A stretch of DNA of 64,000 bases from positions 248,421 to 312,420 of IMG/VR virus record IMGVR_UViG_3300032046_000001; one strand, written 5' to 3'. The notes under the pieces are model-generated. The model saw only the letters and a program-made list of their open reading frames with translations, was not told the origin of the DNA and searched no databases. Position 1 is the first letter of the stretch. Each line of letters starts with the position of its first letter. The position numbers were made by a program, and so were the translations under genes. Of the stretch, positions 1,661-60,085 are shown one piece after another.

Positions 1661-1680
1661 TTCACATATTAATATATATA
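1661..1680 (-). promoter_or_regulatory. Conserved intergenic motif, putative phage promoter (copy 1)
   Basis: Plus strand TTCACATATTAATATATATA, 28 nt upstream of tRNA-Glu; identical to 17205..17224. Confidence 0.65.
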
Positions 1681-1781
1681 AATGTTCATCGATATCCCAA
1701 AATCAAAAAATCAACCTTCCAACACCAAATGCCCCATAATGTTTTCCAACAGGAACACATGGCATTGGATTTAAGGGATTT

Positions 1782-2186
1782 TCATATAATACCATTTCCG
1801 AGTCCTTCAACTAATTGAAAATAAAAAATCATGTATTCATCATATGACCTATGAAATATTGGTCTTATATTGTTTATTGAAAAGGGAACCGTATCCCTTT
1901 CTAAAACGTCAGTTAAACAACCACTTGTAAATTTATGTTTTCGTTTTTTATATATGATTTCTCCTGTCATCATCATACTTCTAAAAAAATTGAATTGATC
2001 ATGAGTTATTGGTCCCGTACATGTTATTGTCTGTCTGGATCTACCTGAGAATAACCAGTGGAGATACTCCGAATTTCTAATATTCGGTGCTCCAATAATA
2101 AAAAATGGTAACATTATACCTTCATACATGATATTTATAATCATTTCGGGTATTTTCATTTCTGGCATTTTAACATCCCTCATCAA
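1782..2186 (-). CDS. Hypothetical protein, paralog of 2671..3090
   Basis: Shared G..LPF, P.I...E...LF..RS, I.C.GP.T.D, G..IY motifs. Confidence 0.7.
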   Translation of the reverse strand: MMRDVKMPEMKIPEMIINIMYEGIMLPFFIIGAPNIRNSEYLHWLFSGRSRQTITCTGPITHDQFNFFRSMMMTGEIIYKKRKHKFTSGCLTDVLERDTVPFSINNIRPIFHRSYDEYMIFYFQLVEGLGNGII

Positions 2187-2197
2187 ATTAATTTTGA

Positions 2198-2656
2198 CTA
2201 TTTATATCTAACAATATTGACACTTGGAAAATATTGAACGATAATGGAAAGATAAACATTCCAATTACCGCCGCCTAATGTACATCCCATTTTTTCTGGA
2301 ATATAAACTTTATCAGGATCTAATTGATGTATTTCAATATGTCGTTTCAGTTTATTGAATGCATGATCAACAGCTTCATAATTTGTTTTTCTACTATCTG
2401 TTCCAATTTTTTCTTGTCCGAAAACATTAACAACTGATAATAATTCATTGATCTTTATAACCTGAATTGATCCTAATAGAGTATAACCACCTTCTCTACA
2501 CAAATCACGATATTGTTGATAAACTTCGGGATATTTATCACGTATTTGTTTCGCTAAACCAGCCCCCATAATACCGAGGCAATTAACCTGATGACAGATT
2601 AATCCCTCGGTAATAGAGAGCAAATTTCCATTCTGAACATGATATGTTATTTCCAA
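2198..2656 (-). CDS. Macro domain protein (ADP-ribose binding/hydrolase)
   Basis: GNLL...ICHQVNCLGIMGAGLAKQIR...YP and KMGCTLGGGNW, typical macro-domain motifs. Confidence 0.9.
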   Translation of the reverse strand: MEITYHVQNGNLLSITEGLICHQVNCLGIMGAGLAKQIRDKYPEVYQQYRDLCREGGYTLLGSIQVIKINELLSVVNVFGQEKIGTDSRKTNYEAVDHAFNKLKRHIEIHQLDPDKVYIPEKMGCTLGGGNWNVYLSIIVQYFPSVNIVRYK

Positions 2657-2670
2657 ATTTTTATTTCTCC

Positions 2671-3090
2671 TTAACTCTCAAAATCATTAATAGATTTAAT
2701 TCTGAATAAATTTCCTTTTATTACAATTGAAAAATTAACAAAATAATCATATTTACGTGATGGTATTTTACTTATTACTGCAATATATCGTGGCAATACA
2801 TCACTTTCTCCAAAACCACTTAATCGGCACTGCAACATTTTGTATGGATTATTATTGTATATCATAATACCCATAACTGGAAATGATTTTAAAATCGAAC
2901 ACTCATCACTTGTTAATGGTCCGTAACATCTTATTGCGCGTTCAATGTCATCACTACGTAATTTAAATAAAAATTCAATTGATTCTTCTCTGGAAATACC
3001 CGGAACACAATCGAGAACAAATGGAAGTAATTTCCCATCAATGTTAAGACAAACAAGAATATCTGATAATCTCATAATTAGTTCCTCCAT
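2671..3090 (-). CDS. Hypothetical protein, paralog of 1782..2186
   Basis: ORF with SD; aligns by eye to 1782..2186. Confidence 0.7.
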   Translation of the reverse strand: MEELIMRLSDILVCLNIDGKLLPFVLDCVPGISREESIEFLFKLRSDDIERAIRCYGPLTSDECSILKSFPVMGIMIYNNNPYKMLQCRLSGFGESDVLPRYIAVISKIPSRKYDYFVNFSIVIKGNLFRIKSINDFES

Positions 3091-3312
3091 AATTGAAGTT
3101 TAAAAAATTAATTATCCGTATCATCTATTAATATATTTAGTTTACCTCGTTTTTAATGATTATTTTATTATATCGTCTAACAGCCTTATGTAATCTTCTC
3201 TTATTTTTTTTATGGGTTTTTTTATTTCTTTTTATATAATTAAAATTATCATCATAATTATGACCAAATAATTTTAATAAATATACTTTCTCAAATTTAC
3301 TCTTAGGTTTCA

Positions 3313-3723
3313 TTAATCGTCATATATTGGTGAAAATTTCTTTTTTAATTTTTCATATAATTCGAGTTCGTTTTGAAATTCTTTTTGATGTTTTTCTATT
3401 TCTTTTTGTTTTTCTTGTTCTTTTTCTAATTCAATTTCTTGTTGTCGTTCTTTAATTAATTTTTCGAGAATTTTTTCTTGTCCGAATAAAAGTTCATTAT
3501 ATTCAACAGAAAAATAATCTATTTCATCTTCGCCGTCATAATAATCATGACTGTACTGATAATAAGTTATTGTAATATAATTATCTCCAAGACGAATTCG
3601 ATTAAAATCAAAATTTATTTTAAAAAATTCAGAAAATTTTTTAGAAATTTCTTCAGCCATTTCATGGAATAATTTATGTAATTTTTTGAAAGTTTCAATT
3701 TGTTCTTTTGTCATGTTTACCAA
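3313..3723 (-). CDS. Hypothetical protein with charged coiled-coil C-terminus
   Basis: ORF track, packed in operon. Confidence 0.65.
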   Translation of the reverse strand: MVNMTKEQIETFKKLHKLFHEMAEEISKKFSEFFKINFDFNRIRLGDNYITITYYQYSHDYYDGEDEIDYFSVEYNELLFGQEKILEKLIKERQQEIELEKEQEKQKEIEKHQKEFQNELELYEKLKKKFSPIYDD

Positions 3724-4303
3724 AGATCACATTTCCTTTCTTCGTTTTATAACAATATCCACATTCTAAACATGTTTTTTTATTTTTTTCATATAAACAT
3801 TCAAACCCATTTGCTCTTTTATCATTATTTATATATGCGATTCTAAATCCGTCGGGTGGATCAGGCATTGTTATATCAGTAGATAAAAAAATTTGGATAT
3901 TATTTAATTTATTTAGAACTTTTATTTTTTCAAATAAATTTGGAATCACACACGAACGAGTGTATGTCCAAAATTTAATACTTGATAATGATGAACAAAT
4001 TTTAATCCATGAATCAATATAATCTTCACTATAAAAATCTCCAGACGTGTGAATACGTACAATTGATTCACACGTCTTAGAGATTTTATTTATAATCATA
4101 TCAGAAAAATTAGTTTGATCTTTAGAATATTGAAAATTATTTTCGTATGATCGTTCACAAACTTTATATCTTTTCTGATATTTTAAAACATAACACTCTT
4201 TTTCACACCATTTACTTCTCCCAGGACAGCTATAATAACTGGGCATACTGATATTTAATATTTTTCCTAACTTTGTATTTCCCTTACTGATACAAAAATT
4301 CAT
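3695..4303 (-). CDS. Gp88-like (radical-SAM-related) phage protein
   Basis: CPGRSKWCEKECY, VRIHTSGDFYSEDY...W and terminal CLECGYC motifs. Confidence 0.7.
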   Translation of the reverse strand: MNFCISKGNTKLGKILNISMPSYYSCPGRSKWCEKECYVLKYQKRYKVCERSYENNFQYSKDQTNFSDMIINKISKTCESIVRIHTSGDFYSEDYIDSWIKICSSLSSIKFWTYTRSCVIPNLFEKIKVLNKLNNIQIFLSTDITMPDPPDGFRIAYINNDKRANGFECLYEKNKKTCLECGYCYKTKKGNVIFGKHDKRTN

Positions 4304-4792
4304 TTACGATTGTTGATTACTTTTCTCCTGTAGTATTTTAATATACTCTTGGATAATTGTGCGATAAACTAATCCATTTGGAAAGAATGGTAAAATATCA
4401 AATTCAGAATTTATCAAATTAAAATCATATTCTGTTTTGATACCATCATTATTCAATATTTTATCGAGTGCTTTTGCTGTAGCCGAACTACGACTTATAC
4501 CAGCATCGCACTGACACACTATCGTGTTAACATTGTCTTTATTTTCAAAAATAAAATTCAAAATTTGTCTGGCATGATTTTCATTGAATAAAGTCAATTT
4601 ATATTTTTCAATAATATCATCACCAATATCTTCTTCAACATCGCTAAATTTTAATTGTAGAATTCCTTTACAGTTTCTTCGTTTCGGAATTTTTGCGAAT
4701 TCTTCCGAATTTTCTGTAATTGAAATTATAATATATGGAACATCTGCATCAAAGAATCCTATAGTCCACCTGCTTTCAACTACCAGAATCAT
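4304..4792 (-). CDS. Predicted protein-tyrosine/dual-specificity phosphatase
   Basis: CX5R P-loop IVCQCDAGISRSSATA; ISIT N-terminal motif. Confidence 0.8.
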   Translation of the reverse strand: MILVVESRWTIGFFDADVPYIIISITENSEEFAKIPKRRNCKGILQLKFSDVEEDIGDDIIEKYKLTLFNENHARQILNFIFENKDNVNTIVCQCDAGISRSSATAKALDKILNNDGIKTEYDFNLINSEFDILPFFPNGLVYRTIIQEYIKILQEKSNQQS

Positions 4793-4970
4793 TTTTCTTC
4801 GTCTTTAATTTATAAATACCCCAAATTGTGAAAATCAATAGGGCTGTTCCAATTGGACACTTGATTAAACCCCAAATAAACAGAATACAAAAAACAATCA
4901 ATAAAATAAAGAAATCAATAGGTTCCATTTTTCCCTCCAATTATTTAATATGAATTAATTTCTTCTTTTG

Positions 4971-5147
4971 TCATACTTTATATAATCTCTTTTCAATTTG
5001 ATATATTTCATCATAATCATGACAGTTTGGACATCCTGCATCATAAGTTTCAGCAACCATTTCTCCTTCATATTCATAATATATCGTTCTTGGTTCTAAA
5101 TCTTCTTCATCACCAATCCAACCACATAATCGACAACTACACTTCAT
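4971..5147 (-). CDS. Small zinc-ribbon protein (58 aa)
   Basis: Manual translation MKCSCRLCGWIG...AGCPNCHD...; two CxxC pairs. Confidence 0.6.
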   Translation of the reverse strand: MKCSCRLCGWIGDEEDLEPRTIYYEYEGEMVAETYDAGCPNCHDYDEIYQIEKRLYKV

Positions 5148-5370
5148 GTTCTTCCATTACACCTGATATGGTGTATTTATCGAATTCGTTTATAGTGATA
5201 TTTGATTCTTCCAATATTTGAAATAGTTTCATCAGATCATGATTCAATTGTTGTCTCAATAAACCATATTCATATGGAAAGACAGACATAACATATTGAC
5301 TATCATGAAACTTAAAAGCCACGGTTGAATTTTTGACTCTTTCACTCATCGTCATCCTCCAATTTAGCAA
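5137..5370 (-). CDS. Hypothetical protein
   Basis: ORF track, overlapping neighbours in operon fashion. Confidence 0.5.
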   Translation of the reverse strand: MLNWRMTMSERVKNSTVAFKFHDSQYVMSVFPYEYGLLRQQLNHDLMKLFQILEESNITINEFDKYTISGVMEEHEV

Positions 5371-5593
5371 GTTTTTTATAAACTCTGTTCATATTATCCA
5401 GTGCTTCTTTAATATCATCTTGGTAAAGAACATATTCATCATCATCTACACTTTCAAGTAGACTTTCAATTTCTTTTATATATTCTAAGATTCTATTACC
5501 AATCGAATAACTTGTTGAACTACTATTTGTAACCAAATCATTTTTAACTTTCAATCTGAATTGTCCTCTTATCAATCTCGATAAGTCGTTCAC
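5342..5593 (-). CDS. Hypothetical protein
   Basis: ORF track, operon context. Confidence 0.5.
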   Translation of the reverse strand: MNDLSRLIRGQFRLKVKNDLVTNSSSTSYSIGNRILEYIKEIESLLESVDDDEYVLYQDDIKEALDNMNRVYKKLAKLEDDDE

Positions 5594-5732
5594 GTATTTT
5601 ATTAATTTTTTCTAAAATTTTTTTAATATCTGATTTTGTAACAAAATGATCATTGATTGAATTTTCAACTCTCTTAAGATTGTCTAATAATTCATCGACG
5701 ACAGACCGAAATATAATTCGCCCAAATATCAT
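5544..5732 (-). CDS. Hypothetical coiled-coil protein
   Basis: ORF track, operon context. Confidence 0.5.
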   Translation of the reverse strand: MIFGRIIFRSVVDELLDNLKRVENSINDHFVTKSDIKKILEKINKIRERLIEIDKRTIQIES

Positions 5733-5733
5733 T

Positions 5734-6321
5734 CTAATCAGGTTTTCTCCTAATTATTGATCGAAAATAAATATCCCTACCATCATAGGTGCATTGTGTT
5801 GATTGTATAACTTCAAATCGTCCCTCATATTCAAATAATCGTTTTATTCTTTGAGGAGTCGTGATATTTTGATGAGGATCATATGTTTCATTAAACATCT
5901 CAGTTGAGATAATTATGTCATTTTTATCAAAATTAGGATCATCAACATCTTCATCAAGAATCATCTGGGATAATGATCTGAAATTAGGACACACTAAATC
6001 AATGACACCATTTGTTTCTATTGCGGTTGAAAGAAGATAGATAAAAAATCCTGTCTGATCTCTTGGAATATGTTCGAAATATCTGTAAATTAAAGCCCCA
6101 TTGAATTTATATTTATAAGTTTTCAAAAATTCAAAAATATCATATTTTACTTCAAGAACACAATGATTAATTTCACCACTTAACCATTTCTTGTGTTGTA
6201 ATTCAGCGTATTCTGGTAAATCAGCCGTGAAATAATTGCGGTCTAAATTAACAATAAATTTACCTTCAATATCAATACCCAAATCTGGTTTACCAGCACC
6301 AATATTAAGAAACGATTCCAT
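5734..6321 (-). CDS. SAM-dependent methyltransferase-like protein
   Basis: FLNIGAG motif I, FEH and L...G.I.LVCP motifs. Confidence 0.65.
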   Translation of the reverse strand: MESFLNIGAGKPDLGIDIEGKFIVNLDRNYFTADLPEYAELQHKKWLSGEINHCVLEVKYDIFEFLKTYKYKFNGALIYRYFEHIPRDQTGFFIYLLSTAIETNGVIDLVCPNFRSLSQMILDEDVDDPNFDKNDIIISTEMFNETYDPHQNITTPQRIKRLFEYEGRFEVIQSTQCTYDGRDIYFRSIIRRKPD

Positions 6322-6336
6322 AAATAATATTCTCCT

Positions 6337-6504
6337 TTAACTAAATAACATTCCTATAAAAACAATACCCAAATAAATTATTGCGATTACACCTATTATG
6401 GCAAGTACAATAAAAAATTTAATTAAAAATATACTAAATGCCATAAATATAATTGGAAATATAAAAAAACATATGATAAATAATATAATAAATAATTCAA
6501 ACAT
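6337..6504 (-). CDS. Small membrane protein (55 aa)
   Basis: Manual translation MFELFIILFIICFFIFPIIFMAFSIFLIKFFIVLAIIGVIAIIYLGIVFIGMLFS*, upstream GGAGAG. Confidence 0.6.
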   Translation of the reverse strand: MFELFIILFIICFFIFPIIFMAFSIFLIKFFIVLAIIGVIAIIYLGIVFIGMLFS

Positions 6505-6516
6505 TGTCTATCTCTC

Positions 6517-7239
6517 CTATATAAACTCAATTACTATACTGTTAAAGAACGGTTTCAAATACTTATCAAAATATATTTCTTTATCAATATCATTACAATC
6601 TATCATCTGAATCACTGTTTCTGAAATTTTCATTCTACCATATTTTAAAAGAATTATTTCATAATATTCATTACTGATTGGAATACAAAAAATTTCTGGA
6701 TCTTCATTATTGATTAACTCGTCTCTTATTCTCTGTAGTGATCTAAAAATTGACTCTTTACTAAGAAAATTTATTTTTAGTATCTTTGAATAAAAATAAT
6801 TCATTTGACCATATTTATTAGCTATACCTTTAGCTGTGATTTCATTTTTATTATTGATTGCTATATAACTATTACGATCAGATGATATTATAAAATTTAG
6901 ATAAATATCTCTAAGTTTTAAAGATGTTTCATGATCGAGTATTTTTACTGGAGTTAATAACAATCCATCATATTGCCTCGTTATTATATCACTGTCAACG
7001 ACCTTATTTTTTAGAATAAAGTCATTGACAGTAGCCTCGGTTATTTTTCTTAAAATATTTATCAAATTGGGATACTTTTTCATTAAATTCCCTATTTGAA
7101 TATTTCGTTTTATTTTGTCATTTTTATCAATATTAGAAATATCATAACCCAATGATTCGAGTATAAAATAATGACAACTTTCTATATCGTATAAATAAAT
7201 ATTATTTAAAAATAGTTTACATTTCTCATTTATTTTCAT
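6517..7239 (-). CDS. Minimal family-B DNA polymerase palm-like protein
   Basis: YLYDIESCHY (motif A-like), RQYDGLL (motif C-like), ITAKG; far shorter than a full polymerase. Confidence 0.5.
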   Translation of the reverse strand: MKINEKCKLFLNNIYLYDIESCHYFILESLGYDISNIDKNDKIKRNIQIGNLMKKYPNLINILRKITEATVNDFILKNKVVDSDIITRQYDGLLLTPVKILDHETSLKLRDIYLNFIISSDRNSYIAINNKNEITAKGIANKYGQMNYFYSKILKINFLSKESIFRSLQRIRDELINNEDPEIFCIPISNEYYEIILLKYGRMKISETVIQMIDCNDIDKEIYFDKYLKPFFNSIVIEFI

Positions 7240-7519
7240 CTTTTATAAAATTTATTTCTAATTTATATCCAAATTGAAGGCAAATTTCAGTCATAATACT
7301 AACCACTGTATTATTAATCTCACTATTATCAAATGCGTAGTTAACATGTATCCAATCAAGACCAATTAAATCGCATAATGTCTTGTTTTCTTTGTTTAAA
7401 ATTTCAATTATTTTTTCTCTGATTTGAGATAAGTTTTGAAGTTGTAGTTCTTTTCTTTTAATATACAAGGGAATTAATTCCTCTTCCATTGTTTCATCCT
7501 GTAACATTATTTCCTCCAT
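7226..7519 (-). CDS. Hypothetical protein
   Basis: ORF track with SD. Confidence 0.6.
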   Translation of the reverse strand: MEEIMLQDETMEEELIPLYIKRKELQLQNLSQIREKIIEILNKENKTLCDLIGLDWIHVNYAFDNSEINNTVVSIMTEICLQFGYKLEINFIKDENK

Positions 7520-7526
7520 TATTTTA

Positions 7527-8399: not shown

Positions 8400-8430
8400 T
8401 GAAAAAATTTATTCCTTTCATTATAAAATA

Positions 8431-8464: not shown

Positions 8465-8468
8465 ACAA

Positions 8469-18703: not shown

Positions 18704-18723
18704 TTCATAGATTAATATATATA
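18704..18723 (-). promoter_or_regulatory. Conserved intergenic motif, putative phage promoter (copy 3)
   Basis: TTCATAGATTAATATATATA, 18/20 to consensus. Confidence 0.5.
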
Positions 18724-23064: not shown

Positions 23065-23640
23065 TTAATATATTTTCATCATACTCTTAATTATTTCACT
23101 GTCATTCTTACTGGAAACAATAGTTGAAATATCATTTGTTCCAAATTTTTTAATTCGAATTGCCCATTCATCGATATCTGAAAATATGTCTAAATATTTA
23201 TGAGTTTCATTAACTCTATCTTCAAGCGTTTGGTTTGGAATCTTATTTATATTTAAATAATCTATTAATAGACTGATTAAAAATTCAAAATTAAAATTTT
23301 GATTTTTTGATCTAACAATCAATTCATGATAAAAACCATCAGCATAAATCGACATTCCTCTATACATCTTAAATTCGTCATCGATATGAAAATTGAAAAA
23401 ACAATTGTGATAATTGTCTTTATACTTGTAACTGAAATTAATTTTCAAATAAAAATTTTTTAAATTTATTTTTTCAATTAGATCATCTGGAATAACAACA
23501 ACACTTAATATTTGTCTTAACTCATTAAGATCTACTTTAGTTTCACTTAAAAATGAAACCATTGCTATTGATCCATAATTGTGATGATTATCAATAAATA
23601 ATATAGACTGTTTAAATTGCTCAATTCCAAAATATGTCAT
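23065..23640 (-). CDS. Hypothetical protein coupled to rpoB
   Basis: ATG overlaps the rpoB stop. Confidence 0.65.
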   Translation of the reverse strand: MTYFGIEQFKQSILFIDNHHNYGSIAMVSFLSETKVDLNELRQILSVVVIPDDLIEKINLKNFYLKINFSYKYKDNYHNCFFNFHIDDEFKMYRGMSIYADGFYHELIVRSKNQNFNFEFLISLLIDYLNINKIPNQTLEDRVNETHKYLDIFSDIDEWAIRIKKFGTNDISTIVSSKNDSEIIKSMMKIY

Positions 23641-26600
23641 TAATCTCCTTTATCGATTCCGATAACTGTTAGATATGAATTTAATAATCGTACAGATTCA
23701 CTTATCATATCATTCTCTTTATAAATTTCATTCCGTAATTTATTTCCAGAATCGATTTGATCAAACATCCATTTATTCTTAGCCTCAATTGAATCAGACT
23801 TGGTTGTCATTGATTCATTCAAATTATGAACAGAATCATGAGCAATCATACAACTAACTTCCATTTCACCAAGTCTTTGACCACCATTATTTCTTTTACC
23901 ACCAGTTGGTTGTAGTGTTTTCTTAGTATATGTTCCAATTCCTCTCGCTGATAATTTATCTTCAGCTATATGAATCATTCGAAAGAAATACAAATACCCT
24001 ACAGCTAAATCATTTACAAGCGTATCACCGGCAACTGGATCATATATTGGATATTTAAATCGAGTGTTTGTATATTTCAACGCTTTTTTACATTGCTTTA
24101 TATTTATCGATTCAAATGGTGGTTGAATCAAAGAAAGATCATCAATAAATTTTTCATCAATCTTGACCATTTTTAATTGATTTTTAAACTGGTTAAAATA
24201 CCAGTTATCTTTTGTATTATCAATAATTTTAATATATTTTAATAAATATTTTTTAATGGTTGATTGTGATAAGATACCCTCCTTCAATTCTTGATATTTG
24301 AGTTTTTCTTCTTCAGATTCAAGTGAATCAATCATTTGTAATAATTCATTATCTTTTTTAATCAAACTTCGCATGTTATTTTTCAGATCCATTAATGACA
24401 TTGCCAAATGAAGTTCAAATAACTGTCCGATGTTCATTCGACTTATTATTCCTAATGGATTGATGATAATATCTAATGGTCTACCATCAGGTAATTTCGG
24501 CATATCTTCAGTTTTGACAATCTTTGAAATAACACCTTTATTGCCGTGTCTATTTCCTATTTTATCGCCAACTTCGATTTTCCGAATATAATATCCTGTT
24601 AGATGAACAAAAATACCATCAAACTTCTCACCTTTAATTTTATACTTACCCTCAGATAAAAAGTTGTTTAAATTATTTTTAGCGAATTTATTATATTCAC
24701 TTTTGGGTAAATATTTTCCCAAGATTTTACTTATTTTTTTCTCTTTTATTTTTTGATCAATAATTTTTTGTTCAATCCAATCTTGAAATTCTTGAGGTAC
24801 ATTCTTAGTTGGATAATCATTGACATAAATATTACTTTCGAGAATACACATCTTTTTGGGAGATATTAAATTTTCATCTTCTTCAAATAACACACTGAAG
24901 TCATTGTTTTGTTGTACTTTTCGTAACATTGCATATGGTTGACCAGTATTAATCCACTCCCCAGGTTCAGGTAATGGTTTATATTCCATAGTCCTCGCAC
25001 GTTCACCATATTCGTCATACTCTTCAGGTTGTGGCTTACATGTATTCAAATTTGAAAGTATTTTATTTGATGGGATAAAGAATGAGAGATCTCGATAATG
25101 AATAGAAGATAAGATTCGTTCATCGACTAATCTTTCGGATATCACTATACCATCTTCATAATTATAACCATAGTATATACCAATACCTGTTAATAAATTT
25201 CTACCAATACTAATATTACGATCCTTTGTAAATAATGATTCAACTAAAATATCACCTTGACGAAATCGTTCTCCCTCTTTGAAGTTCGTTTCCATCATGT
25301 CCATATTATCAGTATAAATTTTCTTGTAACCAGTTTGAATTAATTCGATTTCATCATCATCATACTTGACAATAATAAATCCCTCATCATCGTCATGATA
25401 TAATACAATTCCATCTTTTTTGGCCATCTTAAGAAAGTTTGTATATTGCGTATATAAACTCTCACATCCACTTTGAATCAATGGTTTTTCTGGTTTTCTT
25501 AAAAGGATAGCTTGTCTCATTTGAGACGAGGCCATTTGTAATCTTGTTTGGTCGTCATGCTCTAAAAAAGGCACCATAGCAACTGGAATTGATATGGGAC
25601 TTTTAGATTGAATCTCGCTTGTGAATTTCATATTATGATCTAATTTTGAAGTTGGTAGAATATTTCCGACAATTCCACAATTATCTCTATCTGGTGTATC
25701 AACAACACAAATTCGTCCGAACATTGAATCATTGATATCACGAATATTTTCTGGAACACTCTTTCTTTCGAAACCATTCGGACCCAATAATGATATTCTT
25801 GATAATTCAGTCAATGAATCAATAGGATTTATTGAAAAATCAAATTGAATAATTTCCGATACATTACAGTTCTGTAATATTTCGGATGAATTGATATTAA
25901 ATTTTGGTTTTGAATTTTTAGTTATAATACATAGATTGAATATTGCTTTTGCCACATAACTAAAAATTAAATATTCAAAACATCTAATTCGTTTATTTTC
26001 ATAATTTAAAAAATCAAAAGGTCCATTTTGTATAGCATCAATAAAATCTTCTATAACAGAACCAGTTTTAAGAAATCTGGCTGTTATAACATCAATTTTT
26101 GGTATAAGATCTAATCCATATAATATTTCTTCACCTTTAAGTTTGGCATTATACTTAGTAAAAGTTTCACCCAACATCTTGGTATATTCGTCTTTGGTCT
26201 TATTCATATTATAATATAAATAGACTTGTTTAATTAATCGATTATAAAATGTGTCTTCTAAACCTTCAACGTTTTCCTGACTTAAATTAAATCGTGAATT
26301 TAATACTTCTGGACCATAATAGGCCAATAATAATAATGCGAAAGGTAGTTTTTTATTAAGAAAGGTAAATATGATCGTTTTCTTTTCATAAAGTATTATA
26401 GTCTGGACATTTGATTTAAACTTAATTATAAAACTATCATCTGATTTTTTATTCAATTTTGTTATTATTGGAAAATCGGTAATTTGAAAATGAGGAATCT
26501 TTCTTTTACCATTGATAAAAATATAATTATCGTCAATGAGTTCTGGAATGTTAATACTTAGATCAACTTTTGCCTCATCTTTTGATAAGATAATATTTAA

Positions 26601-26801
26601 ATTTTTCTTAAACGTTTTCTGTAACTCTTCCCCTTGAGATCGACAATCGTTTATTTCAAACTTCTCAATTTTATATCCAATTTCTTTGACTGGTTGTAAT
26701 GCCTCAAATATTTGTCCTTCAAGTTTTTCATATTCACGTTTTCTTAAAGTAAAAATATTATCAACATCATCAATTTTTAGATTCGGATTTTCTATAATCA
26801 T
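23640..26801 (-). CDS. rpoB: DNA-directed RNA polymerase subunit beta (phage-encoded)
   Basis: GRICVVDTPD..NCG, PFLEHDD..R..M.S.QMRQA, GYNYEDG, GDKIGNRHGNKGV, PLGIISRMNIGQL, GGQRLGEME. Confidence 0.96.
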   Translation of the reverse strand: MIIENPNLKIDDVDNIFTLRKREYEKLEGQIFEALQPVKEIGYKIEKFEINDCRSQGEELQKTFKKNLNIILSKDEAKVDLSINIPELIDDNYIFINGKRKIPHFQITDFPIITKLNKKSDDSFIIKFKSNVQTIILYEKKTIIFTFLNKKLPFALLLLAYYGPEVLNSRFNLSQENVEGLEDTFYNRLIKQVYLYYNMNKTKDEYTKMLGETFTKYNAKLKGEEILYGLDLIPKIDVITARFLKTGSVIEDFIDAIQNGPFDFLNYENKRIRCFEYLIFSYVAKAIFNLCIITKNSKPKFNINSSEILQNCNVSEIIQFDFSINPIDSLTELSRISLLGPNGFERKSVPENIRDINDSMFGRICVVDTPDRDNCGIVGNILPTSKLDHNMKFTSEIQSKSPISIPVAMVPFLEHDDQTRLQMASSQMRQAILLRKPEKPLIQSGCESLYTQYTNFLKMAKKDGIVLYHDDDEGFIIVKYDDDEIELIQTGYKKIYTDNMDMMETNFKEGERFRQGDILVESLFTKDRNISIGRNLLTGIGIYYGYNYEDGIVISERLVDERILSSIHYRDLSFFIPSNKILSNLNTCKPQPEEYDEYGERARTMEYKPLPEPGEWINTGQPYAMLRKVQQNNDFSVLFEEDENLISPKKMCILESNIYVNDYPTKNVPQEFQDWIEQKIIDQKIKEKKISKILGKYLPKSEYNKFAKNNLNNFLSEGKYKIKGEKFDGIFVHLTGYYIRKIEVGDKIGNRHGNKGVISKIVKTEDMPKLPDGRPLDIIINPLGIISRMNIGQLFELHLAMSLMDLKNNMRSLIKKDNELLQMIDSLESEEEKLKYQELKEGILSQSTIKKYLLKYIKIIDNTKDNWYFNQFKNQLKMVKIDEKFIDDLSLIQPPFESINIKQCKKALKYTNTRFKYPIYDPVAGDTLVNDLAVGYLYFFRMIHIAEDKLSARGIGTYTKKTLQPTGGKRNNGGQRLGEMEVSCMIAHDSVHNLNESMTTKSDSIEAKNKWMFDQIDSGNKLRNEIYKENDMISESVRLLNSYLTVIGIDKGD

Positions 26802-27883: not shown

Positions 27884-30667
27884 TTATTTTATTTTCTCTC
27901 CAAGTAGGATCTTATCTATTATTCCTGAATATTGACCAACTTCAAAAAGACCTTTTATGATACTTCTTTTTGGATCTGAAAAACCAAGACTTAGAATCCA
28001 TGATTCGAATGCCGGAACTTGTTGTATACTATGCCATTCTGGTTTAACATTCTCTCTATTTTCAACCAATCTCCATTTTGTATAACCACTCCACATTAAT
28101 TGACTAATGACAGCTTCAATATGAATATGATGAATCTTTCCATTATTATTATAAATTTTGAATAATTTTTCTGCCATTTCACCAGGAATTTGATTATCAC
28201 TAAAATGATGAAAAGCATCACAAGCAACCGAAAGATCAGCAACAATATCATCTTGTTTTAAATCACCATCAGATTTTGCACCTCTAATATTTGCAACACC
28301 TGACGTATGAAATGTTCTTAGAATCAATTGAGTAGACCGTTCACCTAATGTTTGTGCTGCAATAATACCAATATATTTACTATTTAAAATCTTGTAAAGA
28401 TTACCATAACATTTGTGACAAATTTTATTACTTCTACAATATATCGGTGATCTCAAAAGAATGATTTTACCAATTAGATTCTTATAATTTTCTTTTGTAA
28501 TTTCAACATATTCATTATTATCATTTAAATAATAACGATATAATAACATCTCGGCTTTTTGTACAGAATCGACATTGATAGTTAAGTGATCTCTTGTTCC
28601 ACAATCTTCTAAATCAAGATCCTTTTGAAGATTAACACAAGAAAAATTTAATTTTCTTGAAAGATAGCCAGATTCCCCTGTATTTAAAGCAACATCTAAT
28701 AATCCTTTTCTACATCCGTATGTTGATATAAAAAATTCTTCAGGTGTTAAACCATCTAATAAACTCGATTTAACTGGTGTTGGTATAATCTCACCTTTAA
28801 AGTTCGAAATAAAACCTCTTGATAGAATAATTTGTCTTGCTTGATCCCATGTTCCTCTAGATCCAGAACTAATCATATAAGAATAGTTAAAATTTTCTTT
28901 CAAAAAGTTTTCTGTTTCCAGACTGGAAATTTTATTTAACTGGGTTACGATATTATCAGATTCATATAATTCTTTCTTAAGCGAATCATCTTTTAATTCG
29001 AATGAATCCAATGACATTGTTGGACCAAATAAGGTAGCGTATTTAAAACCGCAATTTTTAATCTGATCTAAAATTTCAGCTAGGATCGTGTAGTCATATT
29101 TTGATTTAATATCTTCTAAAATATTTAATAGTTCTTTCTTTGATATTATCTTATCAATTATAGGATAATCATTCGGTAAACAATCATTGAATATTTTTCT
29201 ACTTTCTGTAATTTTTTGACCTTTACAAACGACCATCTTTTTCAATTTTGGAAATTGATTTGAAGTTAATGCGTATATACCAAGAATCATATCTTGAGAA
29301 TGAGTAGTTGTTAATAATCCATTTGCGGGATTACTCAAATTTTTAGTTATTAAAAATTTATCATAGACTTCTTGTTTTGATTCTTCTGATATAGGCACAT
29401 ATACAGCCATCTGATCACCATCAAAATCTGCATTAAAACAACCACAAACTAACGGGTGAATCTTGATTGTATTATTCCCATGAATTCGATATACTGTTTC
29501 ATTATTATCATCTTTCTTTTCGAAAATGACAGAATTATTATTATCTAATTTTATTTTGAAACCTAACATACCCAATCTGTGAAGAGAAGGTTGTCGATTA
29601 ATAATACACACTTGAGGATGTTGTTCAAAATATTCTTTGACAAATTCGAATAAATAATATGATTTTGTAAGAATCGTCTGATCTAATATTTGAATCGCAC
29701 TATTAAGAAATTTAACTATTCCGCGATATGTCATTTCTTTTGCGATGTCAATTTTAAATAATTCAAGAATCATACTATAAGGTAAAATACACTCATCTAA
29801 TTTCAACATTGGATCTGGTGTGATCACAGCCCTACCTGAAAAATCAATTCTCTTACCTAATATATGTCCTCTGATTAAACCATCTTTTTCTGACATTGAC
29901 GATAAAATATAACCATATAGTTCATTCACATCTTTTTGAAGTTGATGATAATATTGATAATATATTTTTTTATCATTCGCAATATCATAGTTTGTATTGG
30001 CCATAATTTCTTTTTTGGTTAATAACCTGATATAGAATCTATTTATTTTATCTACGATTTGGTTACGATTATTTTTTTCTGTGATTTTTGATGCAGGACG
30101 TAAATCAGCAGGTAAGACAATAACTTCATTAATCAATACGTTATGAATATTGTCATATATATATTTCCATTTTGGATCATCCAACTTATATTTTGAAGTT
30201 TCATACAATAATTTTATAACAGCTCCCATTTTATCCCATCTTTCAGAATCAGATGGAATATTATTAGGATCATCTGTCACTAAATATTTTTCACCTTTTT
30301 TATATAATATACTTCTTTCATTTGAAATTAATATATCAACCAGGGATTTAATTTTAGAACCACATAAACTGGAAATCAAATCGTAAAAAATTGGATTCAT
30401 AACTGGTAAAGGAAGTTTGATTTTTGCAAATCTTTTTCTTCTTTCACCACAATTAGTTATTTCCACACCACATATTTTACAAACTTCACCTTCACCAGAA
30501 AGTCCATAAAAAGTTCCACATTGACATGTATAATTTTTTACTGGACCAAAAATCTGTTCAGAAAATAAACCATCTTCTGTAAATCTGCCACGATTATTAA
30601 TTATTTTTGAAGTTTTGATTTCTTTCAAATCTTCACAAAAGTCATGTATATCTAAGAGTTTCGACAT
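27884..30667 (-). CDS. rpoC: DNA-directed RNA polymerase subunit beta' (phage-encoded)
   Basis: IFGP...CQCG..CKICG, LGKRIDFSGRAVI, NRQPSLHR, NADFDGDQMAV, RKGL.D.AL.T..SGYL.RKL, LRTFHTSG. Confidence 0.97.
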   Translation of the reverse strand: MSKLLDIHDFCEDLKEIKTSKIINNRGRFTEDGLFSEQIFGPVKNYTCQCGTFYGLSGEGEVCKICGVEITNCGERRKRFAKIKLPLPVMNPIFYDLISSLCGSKIKSLVDILISNERSILYKKGEKYLVTDDPNNIPSDSERWDKMGAVIKLLYETSKYKLDDPKWKYIYDNIHNVLINEVIVLPADLRPASKITEKNNRNQIVDKINRFYIRLLTKKEIMANTNYDIANDKKIYYQYYHQLQKDVNELYGYILSSMSEKDGLIRGHILGKRIDFSGRAVITPDPMLKLDECILPYSMILELFKIDIAKEMTYRGIVKFLNSAIQILDQTILTKSYYLFEFVKEYFEQHPQVCIINRQPSLHRLGMLGFKIKLDNNNSVIFEKKDDNNETVYRIHGNNTIKIHPLVCGCFNADFDGDQMAVYVPISEESKQEVYDKFLITKNLSNPANGLLTTTHSQDMILGIYALTSNQFPKLKKMVVCKGQKITESRKIFNDCLPNDYPIIDKIISKKELLNILEDIKSKYDYTILAEILDQIKNCGFKYATLFGPTMSLDSFELKDDSLKKELYESDNIVTQLNKISSLETENFLKENFNYSYMISSGSRGTWDQARQIILSRGFISNFKGEIIPTPVKSSLLDGLTPEEFFISTYGCRKGLLDVALNTGESGYLSRKLNFSCVNLQKDLDLEDCGTRDHLTINVDSVQKAEMLLYRYYLNDNNEYVEITKENYKNLIGKIILLRSPIYCRSNKICHKCYGNLYKILNSKYIGIIAAQTLGERSTQLILRTFHTSGVANIRGAKSDGDLKQDDIVADLSVACDAFHHFSDNQIPGEMAEKLFKIYNNNGKIHHIHIEAVISQLMWSGYTKWRLVENRENVKPEWHSIQQVPAFESWILSLGFSDPKRSIIKGLFEVGQYSGIIDKILLGEKIK

Positions 30668-33223: not shown

Positions 33224-33244
33224 TTCACATATTTATTATATATA
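33224..33244 (-). promoter_or_regulatory. Conserved intergenic motif variant, putative phage promoter (copy 4)
   Basis: TTCACATATTTATTATATATA; first 10 nt identical to consensus. Confidence 0.45.
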
Positions 33245-35191: not shown

Positions 35192-35192
35192 A

Positions 35193-40393: not shown

Positions 40394-40413
40394 ATCACAT
40401 ATTAATATATATA
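40394..40413 (-). promoter_or_regulatory. Conserved intergenic motif, putative phage promoter (copy 5)
   Basis: ATCACATATTAATATATATA, 19/20 to consensus. Confidence 0.62.
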
Positions 40414-57716: not shown

Positions 57717-58328
57717 TCATTTATTTGTTATCAAACAAAATTGAACATTTTCATCTGGTACTGTCACCAGACTAAACTCATCATTAAACCAACATTTGAT
57801 CCACATTTTCAATAATTCATTTGAACTGAATTGGGCATATACTTTATTACTAAATTGGACTACTGATGGCAATTTAGTTACAATCGTACTTATTTTTTTT
57901 ATTTTATGCGATGTGAGTTGTAATTTTTCATCCGTAGGATTCTGTTGGATTAATTTTGGGTGTGGACAGTAAATGATACACAACTTATCATCTACCATCT
58001 TGAAGATCTCGTTCATGTATAAAAATGTCTGAGTATCAATATCATAACAGACTTTATCTGTATTTAACACACGTTGAATTGATGTGTGTTTTCTACAGAG
58101 TAAATCAATACCTCTATTTTTATTATCAATACAAGCTGGACATTCTTTTTCATCTAATAAAATTTTTGATGGGATTTTATCAAACTCGATTTGACCAACT
58201 TTATTAAAAAAAGATAATACAATGTCTCTATTTAATAGATATTTCAATATTGTAATTGGAAAAATATCTTTAGTTGGATCTGATCCTAAATTCTCTTTAA
58301 TTATTTTTTCTGCTGGTATAATATTCAT
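57717..58328 (-). CDS. Hypothetical protein with CPAC..C..H zinc motif
   Basis: ORF track. Confidence 0.7.
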   Translation of the reverse strand: MNIIPAEKIIKENLGSDPTKDIFPITILKYLLNRDIVLSFFNKVGQIEFDKIPSKILLDEKECPACIDNKNRGIDLLCRKHTSIQRVLNTDKVCYDIDTQTFLYMNEIFKMVDDKLCIIYCPHPKLIQQNPTDEKLQLTSHKIKKISTIVTKLPSVVQFSNKVYAQFSSNELLKMWIKCWFNDEFSLVTVPDENVQFCLITNK

Positions 58329-58502
58329 TTAACCTACGTTCTCCTTTAATGATATTTCTTTTTTTTGCGTTTAGTCTGTTTTAAATATAAGTTTGAAAAA
58401 AATAAAATTAAGTTATCTTATATAAATACACCTCCAAAAATATTTAAAAAATTTGGAAAAAAATTGATTTTGAATTGATATTTTTTCAAACATCAATTCT
58501 CT

Positions 58503-58522
58503 ATCACAAATTAATATATATA
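58503..58522 (-). promoter_or_regulatory. Conserved intergenic motif, putative phage promoter (copy 6)
   Basis: ATCACAAATTAATATATATA, 18/20. Confidence 0.55.
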
Positions 58523-58544
58523 GTTGTTTTGTTTAAAACAAAAA

Positions 58545-58811
58545 CTACACCGATAAAGTAACAGGGTTATTGTAATTGTCTAAATTAATTTCAATATTCC
58601 CATTCACCATTTGATCTACAGTCAATTTGATCTTCATCTTAGCATGGGTTGGTAAAAAATTATCTGTGTATAAAACATGCATCCCATTCTTAAATTGAAA
58701 TGCGATACCATCTGGAGCTTCAGAACAAACTATAAGTTCTGATCGTTTAATTGTGAAAACATGATCACCTTTTTTTATTCTGATTTCATATTGTGGTTTT
58801 GGCTGATTCAT
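58545..58811 (-). CDS. Hypothetical protein
   Basis: ORF track with GAGGAG SD. Confidence 0.65.
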   Translation of the reverse strand: MNQPKPQYEIRIKKGDHVFTIKRSELIVCSEAPDGIAFQFKNGMHVLYTDNFLPTHAKMKIKLTVDQMVNGNIEINLDNYNNPVTLSV

Positions 58812-59400
58812 TATATCTCCTCACTAAAATTTCATTTGATACTAATCTTTTGTTCTTATAAATCATTTTTGAAACTATATAAATTAAAATTTCATCTTCA
58901 AGTGTATTTTTTAAATTAGCAAAAATTTCGGGCAACAACTCATCATTATACAATTTAACATATTTCATTATCTCATTTTTATTTTCGTCAATAAATTTAC
59001 TCAAGACATCTAAAAGATTGACTTTAAAATTTTTAAATATTTCAACTAAAAAATTTATATTATTGAATTCTAAAAACTCAACTAACGTATAAACATTTTG
59101 AAAATCTGGTATGTCATTGATAGAAATATTTTCTGGAAAGTCAAACTTATATACTTCTTGTATCTTATTAATTATGTGTTGACATAATATTCTCTGATTA
59201 TTAATCGATTGATTTTTTACATCATCGATAAAGTTTAAGTATGTTTCTTTAAAACTTGTTTTTCCAATATTGTCTATTATTTCATTAAATTCAAATTGAA
59301 TAATCCCATCACCTACAATCTCACTTTGAATTTTTCCTTCATCGTCATCTAACAATTCAGTTGGGAGCATCGAACTCATTAAAATATCTTTATTTGTCAT
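58786..59400 (-). CDS. Hypothetical protein
   Basis: ORF track with GAGG SD. Confidence 0.65.
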   Translation of the reverse strand: MTNKDILMSSMLPTELLDDDEGKIQSEIVGDGIIQFEFNEIIDNIGKTSFKETYLNFIDDVKNQSINNQRILCQHIINKIQEVYKFDFPENISINDIPDFQNVYTLVEFLEFNNINFLVEIFKNFKVNLLDVLSKFIDENKNEIMKYVKLYNDELLPEIFANLKNTLEDEILIYIVSKMIYKNKRLVSNEILVRRYNESAKTTI

Positions 59401-59458
59401 GTATTTCCTCTATTCAGAAAGAAAATTTTTAATGATAATTTTTAAAACGTTATTTTAC

Positions 59459-60019
59459 TTATTCTTTATAATTTAATAATTCTGTTTTGGTCATAATCGA
59501 ATAAACTGGAATTTTTAATTCTTCCATAATAAGTTGTTTCGCGTTATTTTCTTCACGATCAACTAAAACAATTATAGCCACTGGATTATAATCGTGTTGT
59601 TTTAAAACTTCATATGAATATTTTAAGGAATCGCCTGTTGTTAAAACATCATCAACAATGAGGGTATCTTTATGTACATCTTCAGATCCTATTCGTCTTC
59701 CTTCTATTAATTTTTTAGTTCCATAATCTTTTTGTTGTTTTCTTATAAATAATCCATTTCTATGTAAGTTTGTAACAACCGAACAAACGATTGGATCGGC
59801 ACCAGATGTAATACCAGCCACATTTAAAAATTTAATATTATTTTCTATTACAATATAATCAATATTCCATCCGATTACATTGGGTATTCCGGGATATAAT
59901 AATAATTCTTTACAATCAATGTAAAAATCACTTTTCTTTCCTGATGATAACGTGAAATCTCCGTACTTCACAATTTTAGAAAATTCTTCTAATAACTTTT
60001 GTTTTTCATAATTCATCAT
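59459..60019 (-). CDS. pyrE: Orotate phosphoribosyltransferase
   Basis: GDFTLSSGKKS.FYID, FIRKQ.KDYGT, LIVDDVLTTG.S PRPP motif, VLVDRE. Confidence 0.93.
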   Translation of the reverse strand: MMNYEKQKLLEEFSKIVKYGDFTLSSGKKSDFYIDCKELLLYPGIPNVIGWNIDYIVIENNIKFLNVAGITSGADPIVCSVVTNLHRNGLFIRKQQKDYGTKKLIEGRRIGSEDVHKDTLIVDDVLTTGDSLKYSYEVLKQHDYNPVAIIVLVDREENNAKQLIMEELKIPVYSIMTKTELLNYKE

Positions 60020-60065
60020 AGTTCCTCCTAAAAAAAATTATAAAAAAAATTTGAATATTTTACTA

Positions 60066-60085
60066 TTCGCTTATTAATATATATA
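60066..60085 (-). promoter_or_regulatory. Conserved intergenic motif, putative phage promoter (copy 7)
   Basis: TTCGCTTATTAATATATATA, 18/20. Confidence 0.55.

What the first reader, a model, noticed from the sequence alone, without database searches (positions are those of the whole stretch)
1661..60085. Seven co-oriented copies of a 20-bp motif define a probable phage promoter
Seen: minus-strand consensus TATATATATTAATATGTGAA at 1661, 17205, 18704, 33224, 40394, 58503 and 60066. All are intergenic or at gene ends, and upstream of transcription units that often end in hairpins. There is no obvious sigma70 -35 element. Inference: the recognition element of the phage RNAP or a phage regulator.
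Basis: partly seen in the sequence, partly recalled or inferred. Interest (0 to 1): 0.6.

Follow-up and report, generated by a model that had tools for sequence, protein, structure and literature searches.

The report
Conserved jumbo-phage non-late promoter motif
A 19-base AT-rich signal repeated on one strand of an uncultured 312-kb phage genome is almost certainly the phage's own promoter for its non-structural genes. It closely resembles the early promoter of Bacillus phage AR9, which also makes its own multi-subunit RNA polymerases.

Summary
Six of the seven listed copies match the 20-mer with 2 or fewer mismatches (0.22 expected).

The window is the last 64 kb of a complete 312,420-bp IMG/VR phage genome (28.6% GC). 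Genome-wide, the 13-mer core TATATATATTAAT occurs 18 times, all on the minus strand (0.2-0.4 expected per strand). Seventeen copies lie in the 6.8% non-coding DNA, mostly at the head of minus-strand gene blocks, and GA is invariant 5-6 nt after the core.

The same 19-mer recurs, strand-biased, in many related uncultured jumbo-phage contigs whose proteins are only 35-60% identical. At two orthologous intergenic sites it is the only block that survives.

The motif precedes tRNAs, DNA, NAD and nucleotide metabolism genes and one beta'/beta RNA polymerase operon, never capsid or tail genes. A second motif, GGGAACAAAAT, precedes those.

It closely resembles the AR9 early (virion-polymerase) promoter AAATATATATTAT-(6N)-G. 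The best reading is a non-late promoter read by a phage-encoded polymerase, starting at the conserved TGA. No transcript data exist, so which enzyme reads it is inferred. This is a new member of a known kind.

The parts
1661..1680 (-). Promoter copy with exact 20-mer. The predicted start is at the G or A of TGA (1663/1662). It lies 29 nt upstream of tRNA-Glu (1561-1632) and heads the tRNA and small-ORF unit.
   Evidence: 29.0 bits
3120..3139 (-). It lies 37 nt upstream of the start of ORF 2671-3090.
   Evidence: 24.6 bits
17205..17224 (-). Promoter copy with exact 20-mer, between the NAD synthase gene (17250-18020) and ORF 16644-17078. It is positionally orthologous to L142:13637.
18704..18723 (-). 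Promoter copy (2 mismatches) upstream of the NUMOD4/HNH homing-endonuclease ORF 18010-18675. It is kept in relatives whose beta is 98% identical (L004-L006).
33224..33243 (-). Degenerate copy (one inserted base plus one substitution in the AT block; TGA kept) upstream of ORF 32915-33181 and the beta'/beta operon. A canonical core sits at the orthologous place in L141.
40394..40413 (-). Promoter copy (1 mismatch, top matrix score). It heads the unit running through the GC-rich island (radical-SAM, 804-aa, JAB-like and ThiF-like ORFs) towards the polymerase operon.
   Evidence: 31.0 bits
58503..58522 (-). Promoter copy (2 mismatches) upstream of ORF 57717-58328, followed by the topoisomerase II, helicase, RNA ligase and SbcC genes.
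60066..60085 (-). Promoter copy (2 mismatches; CGA in place of TGA), 56 nt from the core end to the start codon of the phosphoribosyltransferase-like ORF 59459-60019.
27884..30667 (-). Unsplit beta'-like RNA polymerase subunit (927 aa), bacterial type. It lies downstream of the 33224 and 40394 copies.
23640..26801 (-). Unsplit beta-like RNA polymerase subunit (1053 aa). Its only AR9 match is the subunit annotated 'non-virion RNAP beta, C-terminus'.

Best explanation
The motif (consensus a-a-c TATATATATTAAT N-N-N T-G-A) is the promoter of the phage's non-late transcription class. It is a single, long, directional, AT-rich element centred near -10, without a -35 element. Transcription is predicted to start at the conserved G or A of TGA, 5-6 nt after the AT block, and to run into minus-strand units. 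These units encode tRNAs, many small ORFs, nucleotide, NAD and DNA metabolism genes, homing endonucleases and one of the two phage beta'/beta polymerase operons.

I infer that it is read by a phage-encoded multi-subunit RNA polymerase and not by the host sigma-70-type holoenzyme. The most likely reader is the second, virion-type set encoded at genome 3.2-10.4 kb, delivered with the DNA, as in AR9 and phiKZ. The polymerase encoded in the window would then read the second motif (GGGAACAAAAT...) in front of structural genes.

Shown: over-representation, strand and position rules, clade-wide conservation, and the partition of gene functions. Inferred: the start point, the temporal class 'early', and the identity of the polymerase.
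For: Over-representation and direction.
- There are 18 exact cores, all on the minus strand, against 0.2-0.4 expected per strand, and 17 of 18 are non-coding.
- The weight matrix gives 21 hits on the minus strand and 0 on the plus strand.
- The copies head minus-strand blocks, eight of them at divergent junctions.
- G and A at core+5 and +6 are invariant in 18/18 copies found with the core alone.
- TGA is also kept in 12 of 16 exact-core copies in relatives that were not selected for it.

Spacing.
- A ribosome-binding site and start codon follow 43-63 nt after the core in 11 of 18 copies.
- At genome 214658 the ribosome-binding site begins right after TGA, so the start must be at or before it.

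Conservation.
- An IMG/VR scan for the 19-mer returned at least 115 loci. Most share proteins at 35-70% identity with this genome, and the motif sits 30-50 nt upstream of ribosome-binding site and ATG.
- Whole related contigs carry 16, 7 and 7 copies split 14/2, 6/1 and 7/0 by strand, with 0 hits to the reversed-pattern control. They encode the same beta types.
- Footprints: window 17205 against L142:13637, and window 33224 against L141:2073. Only the motif block survives at 57-58% beta identity.

Gene classes.
- The motif precedes tRNAs, NAD synthase, ThyX, ligases, topoisomerase II, SbcC and the beta'/beta operon.
- GGGAACAAAAT precedes the major head, portal, sheath and baseplate genes.

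Not host-type.
- There is no -35, sigma-70-like sites are at chance, and no Sigma70_r2 is found in the genome.

Analogy.
- The AR9 early promoter is AAATATATATTAT-(6N)-G+1 and is assigned to the virion polymerase because its transcripts need neither host RNAP nor new protein synthesis; no virion polymerase has been purified. RNAP-encoding jumbo phages in general have a ~10-nt AT-rich early element centred near -10 (PMC5312081, PMC7598289).
- There are two beta/beta' sets.
- The window beta matches AR9 non-virion beta.
- The other beta matches AR9 'virion RNAP' beta N-terminus, and virion-associated beta in phiKZ-like phages.
- In relative G001 the virion-like operon is directly preceded by the late-type motif.
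Against: - No transcript ends are available. All public runs that hold the phage are DNA from sediment or soil.
- Assigning the motif to a virion-delivered polymerase rests on analogy alone. Virion packaging is untested, and no specificity factor (sigma, gp68/gp226-like) was identified.
- Both beta' proteins are much closer to bacterial beta' than phiKZ-type subunits are (E about 1e-93 and 1e-75). They might therefore work with host factors.
- The core contains a 5-of-6 match to the -10 hexamer (TATATT) at a spacing compatible with a sigma-70-type start.
- A conserved copy (genome 16558; also in L095) lies upstream of the block that ends in the virion-like polymerase genes. That set may therefore also be expressed from this motif.
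- In G001 no canonical copy was found within 20 kb upstream of the window-type polymerase operon.
- The window copy upstream of that operon (33224) is degenerate.
- The similarity to AR9 is a low-complexity AT string and could be convergent.
Confidence: 0.6

Rival explanations
1. It is a phage promoter, but for a middle class read by the polymerase made during infection (the window's beta'/beta set, alone or with a phage factor). True early genes would then use another signal.
For: - Many genes behind the motif are replication, recombination and nucleotide genes, typical of middle classes.
- Some blocks, such as the DNA polymerase block at genome 121842 and the minus block 140538-145569, have neither motif. 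More than two classes therefore exist.
- G001 lacks a canonical copy upstream of its window-type polymerase operon.
Against: - A copy sits upstream of the window-type polymerase operon in this genome (degenerate) and in L141 (canonical). A polymerase cannot provide its own first transcripts.
- The 55-gene block of small ORFs at genome 200-221 kb, typical of early genes, is headed by three copies.
- No third over-represented upstream motif turned up in the k-mer screen.
Confidence: 0.2
2. It is a -35-less promoter read by the host RNA polymerase core. The reader would be the host primary sigma (using TATATT as the -10 element) or an unrecognised phage sigma-like factor, as T4 gp55 reads TATAAATA.
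For: - The core contains TATATT, with a conserved purine 7-8 nt downstream.
- The phage has several T4-like replication genes (split topoisomerase II, SbcC/gp46-like, UvsX-like).
- No phage specificity factor was found.
Against: - There is no -35 and no TG extension.
- Invariance of 13 nt plus 2 nt over 18 copies, and across phages of 26-38% GC whose proteins are 35-60% identical, is not how host promoters behave.
- No Sigma70_r2 domain is found in six frames.
- The genome and its relatives carry two complete beta/beta' sets.
- Unlike T4 late promoters, the motif does not precede structural genes.
- AR9 promoters of nearly the same sequence are transcribed independently of host RNAP (PMC5312081, PMC7598289).
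Confidence: 0.15
3. It is not a promoter but a binding site for a phage DNA-binding protein (operator, partition, replication or packaging signal) that happens to lie between genes.
For: Part of the core (TATATTAATATA) is palindromic in the copies that continue with ATA (5 of 18).
Against: - The motif is strictly directional (21 to 0 by strand) and co-oriented with the downstream genes.
- The right half of the palindrome is variable, while the asymmetric TGA is invariant.
- Its distance to the ribosome-binding site and start codon is fixed and short.
- It sits at the head of nearly every minus-strand block.
- It is dispersed over 300 kb, unlike origins or pac sites.
Confidence: 0.05

Closest known systems
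Early (virion-RNA-polymerase) promoters of Bacillus phage AR9/PBS1: AAATATATATTAT-(6N)-G+1 (PMC5312081)
   Same: - It shares a contiguous ATATATATTA block.
- A conserved purine lies 6-7 nt after the block. Aligning the blocks puts AR9 G+1 on the invariant A of TGA.
- There is no -35 and the motif is multi-copy (34-41 in AR9; about 21 here).
- It can be found by over-representation alone and lies upstream of non-structural units.
- The phage encodes two multi-subunit polymerases.
- A second promoter class containing AACA precedes late genes (AR9 AACA-(6N)-TA/G; here GGGAACAAAAT).
   Different: - The polymerases here are unsplit and clearly bacterial-type. AR9 subunits are split and very divergent.
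- The phage encodes ThyX and dUTPase, so it probably has thymine DNA, unlike the uracil DNA of AR9.
- Proteins are not closely related (beta 22-29% identity over parts).
- The TA/G spacing of the AR9 late consensus is not kept in the second motif.
- No start points have been mapped here.
phiKZ-type early promoters (about 10-nt AT-rich block centred near -10, conserved start 6 nt downstream; PMC7598289)
   Same: The architecture and the logic of a two-polymerase programme are the same. [quoted passage not shown]
   Different: The sequence differs from phage to phage. The present clade is not phiKZ-like in gene content as far as tested, and has no cultured relative in the phage collection.
T4 late promoter TATAAATA read by gp55 with host core
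   Same: It is a single AT-rich -10-like element without a -35, in a phage with T4-like replication genes.
   Different: The T4 element drives late structural genes and is 8 nt long. This one is 13+3 nt, avoids structural genes, and no sigma-like protein was detected.
Single-subunit phage polymerase promoters (T7/T3/SP6 type)
   Same: They are long, nearly invariant, directional, multi-copy promoters specific to the phage's own enzyme.
   Different: No single-subunit polymerase was seen among the proteins scanned here (not searched for specifically). The enzymes present are beta/beta' homologues.

Membership tests
[quoted passage not shown] | Highly conserved AT-rich block of about 10-13 nt, over-represented and located upstream of operons | tested here: met
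   There are 18 exact 13-mers against 0.2-0.4 expected per strand. Seventeen of 18 are non-coding and they sit at the heads of minus-strand blocks.
[quoted passage not shown] | Block centred near -10, with a conserved transcription start about 6 nt downstream | not testable with these tools
   No RNA run holds the phage. Indirect support: GA is invariant 5-6 nt after the block, and one copy has its ribosome-binding site starting right after TGA.
[quoted passage not shown] | The phage encodes two multi-subunit RNA polymerases | tested here: met
   Set 1 is beta at window 23640-26801 and beta' at 27884-30667. Set 2 is beta at genome 3210-7313 and beta' at 8038-10380. Relative G001 carries both beta types.
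[quoted passage not shown] | One polymerase is packed in the virion and transcribes these promoters without host polymerase or new protein synthesis | not testable with these tools
   There are only weak hints. The second beta matches AR9 'virion RNAP' beta N-terminus and annotated virion-associated beta subunits. An HD-domain ORF lies nearby. A late-type motif sits in front of this operon in G001.
[quoted passage not shown] | Genes of the non-virion polymerase lie behind early promoters | tested here: inconclusive
   There is a degenerate copy at window 33224 and a canonical copy at the orthologous place in L141. No canonical copy lies within 20 kb upstream in G001.
[quoted passage not shown] | The polymerases are split into several polypeptides and are highly divergent (phiKZ-related group) | tested here: not met
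   Both sets are single beta and single beta' ORFs with strong matches to bacterial beta'. The motif works like this family's promoters, but the phage is not a member of the phiKZ-related group by this criterion.
Bacterial sigma-70-type promoter | -35 TTGACA-like hexamer 16-18 nt upstream of a TATAAT-like hexamer (or a TG extension) | tested here: not met
   There is no conserved -35 and no TG, only a weak T-run. The scanner scores the copies 9 of 12 at best, and such sites are at chance level (134 against 133).
T4-type late promoter (gp55-dependent) | It precedes late structural genes, and the phage encodes a sigma-like late factor | tested here: not met
   Structural genes carry the other motif. 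No Sigma70_r2 match was found. A gp55-specific profile was not run.
mReC clade (metagenomic Caudovirales with cellular-like beta and beta'; PMC7481178), for the phage and not the motif | Tailed-phage markers plus unsplit beta and beta' recognisable with cellular profiles; placement in the mReC branch of the polymerase tree | tested here: inconclusive
   The markers (head, portal, sheath, baseplate) and unsplit beta/beta' are met. There are 630 homologues of about 1000 aa on contigs up to 277 kb. No tree was built, and contig names were not compared with the paper's list.

The most novel reading that the evidence does not exclude
A very large, uncultured clade of jumbo phages with two unsplit, bacterial-type beta/beta' polymerases uses the same two-promoter grammar as AR9. 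That grammar is an AT-rich ATATATATTA-type element for a virion-delivered polymerase and an AACA-containing element for the polymerase made after infection. This would mean that the host-independent two-polymerase programme of phiKZ/AR9-like phages is homologous to, and probably descended from, this less derived system. The promoter-recognition mode would then predate the splitting of the subunits.
Probability: 0.3. Interest if true: 0.75.

Novelty: new member of a known kind. Interest (0 to 1): 0.5.

Why it matters

This work gives a precise, testable promoter, and a candidate late promoter, for a widespread uncultured clade whose polymerases have been used to discuss the deep history of RNA polymerase. 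The paper describing such phages (PMC7481178) does not mention promoters.

The motif lets transcription units and temporal classes be predicted from sequence in hundreds of metagenomic contigs. It also supplies templates for in vitro work with recombinant polymerases, and a sequence link between the unsplit and the split phage polymerase systems.

The kind of element itself is expected for such a phage, so the surprise is moderate.

Tried and rejected
- **Transcript evidence.** The one run search found nine DNA runs (sediment, soil, mine drainage, freshwater) and none on record as RNA. Read laying was therefore not used, since contigs cannot show starts.
- **Close relatives in the phage collection.** There is no near DNA match and no cultured relative. 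The best 'phage' hits to beta are host rpoB contaminants at 30-37% identity.
- **A specificity factor next to the polymerase operon.** The conserved 804-aa and 426-aa ORFs have no Pfam, PHROG or PDB sequence match. The 426-aa one looks like a Prok-JAB protein and sits with two ThiF-like ORFs, so it is not a polymerase factor. No structure prediction was run. A gp68/gp226 homologue was not searched for directly, because I had no reliable coordinates for it.
- **Uracil DNA as in AR9.** This is rejected as unlikely, because the genome has ThyX and dUTPase (ThyA is absent).
- **Terminator hairpins bounding the units.** They are not enriched.
- **Rfam.** It finds only the three tRNAs.
- **Virion-like versus non-virion-like assignment.** AR9 matches are weak, and both beta proteins hit AR9 non-virion beta best. 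No phylogeny was attempted because of the split and very divergent reference subunits.
- **Exact AR9 late consensus.** The second motif keeps only AACA plus an A/T-rich tail, and the TA at fixed spacing is not conserved.
- **Unrelated IMG/VR hits.** Some 19-mer hits fall in contigs without protein similarity to this genome at the cut-off used: a 3300045988 group, a 'cctgcctgtattttta' group and giant-virus bins. They were set aside.

Full report
**What the window is.** The window is the last 64 kb (G000:C1:248421-312420) of a single-contig IMG/VR virus record. The record is 312,420 bp with a 127-bp direct terminal repeat, is rated 100% complete, and has 28.6% GC. All window genes lie on the minus strand. 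The genome as a whole alternates between minus- and plus-strand blocks.

It is a tailed jumbo phage. Its genes include major head protein, portal, tail sheath, baseplate wedge, DNA polymerase, DnaB-like helicase, UvsX-like recombinase, anaerobic ribonucleotide reductase, split topoisomerase II and SbcC.

It encodes two sets of unsplit beta/beta' RNA polymerase subunits. One set is in the window (beta 23640-26801, beta' 27884-30667). The other is at genome 3210-7313 and 8038-10380. Both beta' proteins match bacterial beta' strongly (E about 1e-93 and 1e-75).

There is no near relative among deposited phages. Beta does have 630 homologues of about 1000 aa on metagenomic contigs up to 277 kb. The phage fits the description of the metagenomic 'mReC' phages (PMC7481178), but I did not test placement in that clade.

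**The observation.** Six of the seven listed copies match the 20-mer with 0-2 mismatches, all on the minus strand. Chance gives 0.22.

The copy at 33224 is degenerate. The 3' half with TGA is intact, but the AT block carries one extra base and one substitution. It fails an ungapped matrix.

One good copy was missed (core 3127-3139, 24.6 bits). A weak in-ORF candidate lies at 9939-9951.

In the whole genome the 13-mer core TATATATATTAAT occurs 18 times, always on the minus strand. Markov models give 0.2-0.4 expected per strand. Seventeen copies lie in the 6.8% of the genome that is non-coding. A matrix built on the copies gives 21 hits on the minus strand and none on the plus strand.

The consensus is a-a-c, the core, three variable bases, then T-G-A. 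G and A are invariant in all 18 copies, although the copies were collected with the core alone. There is no -35; only a weak T-run lies about 20 nt upstream. Sigma-70-type sites in window 1-20000 are at chance level (134 against 133).

**Where the copies sit.** They head nearly every minus-strand block. Eight of them lie in divergent junctions (genome 68808, 74588, 115509, 121744, 147076, 161482, 181359, 221793).

A ribosome-binding site and start codon follow 43-63 nt after the core in 11 of 18 copies. At genome 214658 the ribosome-binding site begins directly after TGA, so a start point must lie at or before TGA. In the window, the copy at 1661 lies 29 nt before tRNA-Glu.

**What is behind the copies.** In the window the downstream genes are:
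- three tRNAs;
- an NAD salvage and synthesis set;
- homing endonucleases;
- DNA and RNA ligases;
- helicase, topoisomerase II and SbcC;
- a GC-rich island with radical-SAM, ThiF-like and JAB-like ORFs;
- the beta'/beta operon.

Elsewhere the downstream genes are ThyX and a block of 55 small ORFs. None of the copies precedes a recognisable structural gene.

A k-mer screen of upstream regions found only three enriched signals besides the ribosome-binding site:
- this motif;
- GGGAACAA(A);
- a structured leader of homing-endonuclease genes.

GGGAACAAAAT(A)T(T)AA occurs about 16 times co-oriented with downstream genes. It precedes the units holding the major head protein, portal, tail sheath and baseplate genes. 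The two motifs therefore partition the genome into a non-late and a late class. At four junctions they stand back to back, about 25 bp apart.

**Conservation.** Most of these share proteins with this genome at 35-70% identity, in contigs of 26-38% GC. In them the motif lies 30-50 nt upstream of ribosome-binding site and ATG. It often has TTTGTTCT 25-30 nt upstream, which is AGAACAAA on the other strand, their version of the late motif.

Further exact-core copies in these loci were not selected for their 3' part, yet 12 of 16 keep TGA at the same spacing.

Three large related contigs carry 16, 7 and 7 copies, split 14/2, 6/1 and 7/0 by strand, with no hit to the reversed-pattern control. Three of the four contigs searched encode the same beta types, and the most complete one has both.

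Two positional orthologues were found at 57-58% beta identity. Window 17205 corresponds to L142:13637 (after the NAD synthase gene). Window 33224 corresponds to L141:2073 (after a ThiF-like gene, upstream of the beta'/beta operon). In both alignments the motif is the only conserved block. Relatives with beta 98% identical keep the 18704 copy.

**Comparison with what is known.**
- AR9 early promoters are AAATATATATTAT-(6N)-G+1. They are assigned to the virion polymerase.
- AR9 late promoters are AACA-(6N)-TA/G. They are read by the non-virion polymerase (PMC5312081).
- The review PMC7598289 states that every RNAP-encoding jumbo phage has an AT-rich block of about 10 nt near -10 upstream of early operons, findable by bioinformatics.

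The present motif shares the contiguous ATATATATTA block. When the blocks are aligned, AR9's G+1 falls on the invariant A of TGA. The second motif shares AACA, but not the fixed TA spacing.

The window's beta matches the AR9 subunit annotated 'non-virion RNAP'. The other beta additionally matches the AR9 'virion RNAP' beta N-terminus and virion-associated subunits of phiKZ-like phages. An HD-domain ORF lies next to that set. In G001 the late-type motif directly precedes that operon.

These points support the AR9-like model, in which the AT motif is read by a virion-delivered polymerase. They do not prove it.

The differences are clear. The subunits are unsplit and bacterial-like. The DNA is probably thymine DNA, because ThyX and dUTPase are present. 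Protein similarity to AR9 is low.

I found no paper that reports this motif in a phage or promoters for mReC phages.

**Verdict.** The element is real, non-random, directional and conserved, and behaves as a promoter.
- About 0.85: it is a transcription start signal specific to the phage programme.
- About 0.6: the committed model, a non-late promoter read by a phage-encoded polymerase with the start at TGA.

The rivals are a middle-class promoter of the other phage polymerase, a host-core promoter with host or phage sigma, and a non-promoter binding site. They are listed with their tests.

Weak points:
- There are no RNA data.
- A conserved copy lies upstream of the block that ends in the virion-like polymerase genes.
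- G001 lacks a canonical copy near its window-type operon.
- The core contains a -10-like hexamer.

The finding is a new member of a known kind. Its added value is that it extends the AR9/phiKZ promoter logic to a large uncultured clade with unsplit polymerases.

Noticed in passing
Genome G000:C1, e.g. 138022 (L129:18022), 181396 (L132:1396), 184213, 221830 (L134:1830), 224130, 131989, 133266 on +; 25140, 35257, 49764, 244695 on -: A second over-represented upstream motif, GGGAACAAAAT(A)T(T)AA, has about 16 co-oriented copies. It precedes the units with major head, portal, tail sheath and baseplate genes, so it is a probable late promoter. It contains the AACA of the AR9 late consensus. Relatives use (T)AGAACAAA. 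At four junctions it stands back to back with the AT motif.
   Followed up: partly
Genome 1205-, 37656-, 40173-, 46983-, 69411+, 74643+, 125123+, 135972+, 151333+, 172559+, 181414+, 205435-, 244684- (alignment A3): About 13 copies of a ~90-nt conserved leader (AAGAGAGATAGAG...CGAAAAG...CTTCTCTCTT) lie upstream of homing-endonuclease-like ORFs (starting MKIFENL... or MNYYIY...). Eight of 14 predicted pairs show compensatory changes. By eye, a further covarying pairing links a loop to a stretch just before the ribosome-binding site. There is no Rfam match. It may gate endonuclease translation, as hairpins do for T4 homing endonucleases.
   Followed up: partly
window 31098-37607 (-), GC 0.36-0.40 against 0.27 around it: A GC-rich island holds two ThiF/E1-like ORFs (33298-33999, 31098-31991), a 426-aa Prok-JAB-like ORF (33983-35263) and an 804-aa ORF with no match anywhere. 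It looks like a ubiquitin-like conjugation/deconjugation cluster. It is syntenic with the polymerase operon in relatives (L004, L141, L144).
   Followed up: partly
window 9545-10711, 13165-15171, 17250-18020, 20028-20705, 59459-60019 (-): An almost complete NAD salvage and synthesis set is present: NMNAT-like fused to a CoaE-like domain, a NAPRT-like 668-aa protein, NAD synthase, an isochorismatase/nicotinamidase-like ORF and a phosphoribosyltransferase. All lie behind the AT motif. It may counter NAD-depleting host defences.
   Followed up: no
genome 16484-16601 (L123): The motif copy at 16558 is followed at once by a 9-bp stem and a T-run whose 5' arm overlaps the predicted start. Transcripts arriving from the upstream endolysin gene could form the full terminator, while transcripts started at the motif could not.
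   Followed up: no
genome junctions 115446-115559, 121591-121842, 147060-147137, 161422-161511: At four divergent junctions the plus-strand gene (including the DNA polymerase at 121842) starts only 16-85 nt from the AT core, with no late-type motif in between. Their promoters are unidentified. The AT block may work in both directions, or a third class may exist.
   Followed up: no
genome 188359-199647 (L132): A tail sheath gene (652 aa) is followed by an HNH homing endonuclease (676 aa). Next comes a 2382-aa ORF whose C-terminus is again sheath-like.
   Followed up: no
L141:5425-9291 and L141:9303-10016; L145:12810-13697: In relatives the polymerase genes are invaded by mobile elements. There is an intein in beta' (1288 aa, Intein_splicing) and HNH/NUMOD4 endonuclease genes between beta' and beta.
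   Followed up: no
IMG/VR loci L010, L011, L019, L026, L027 and others (3300045988 contigs); L014, L052, L108, L116, L117, L120, L121: Two other groups of viral contigs, without protein similarity to this genome at E<1e-8, carry the identical 19-mer in a conserved context. It is unclear whether they use a similar promoter or match by chance.
   Followed up: no
one search hits P0063, P0110: Contigs of up to 255 kb that encode close homologues of the phage beta are deposited as 'Candidatus Thorarchaeota archaeon' MAG contigs. These are probably phage contigs binned into archaeal genomes.
   Followed up: no
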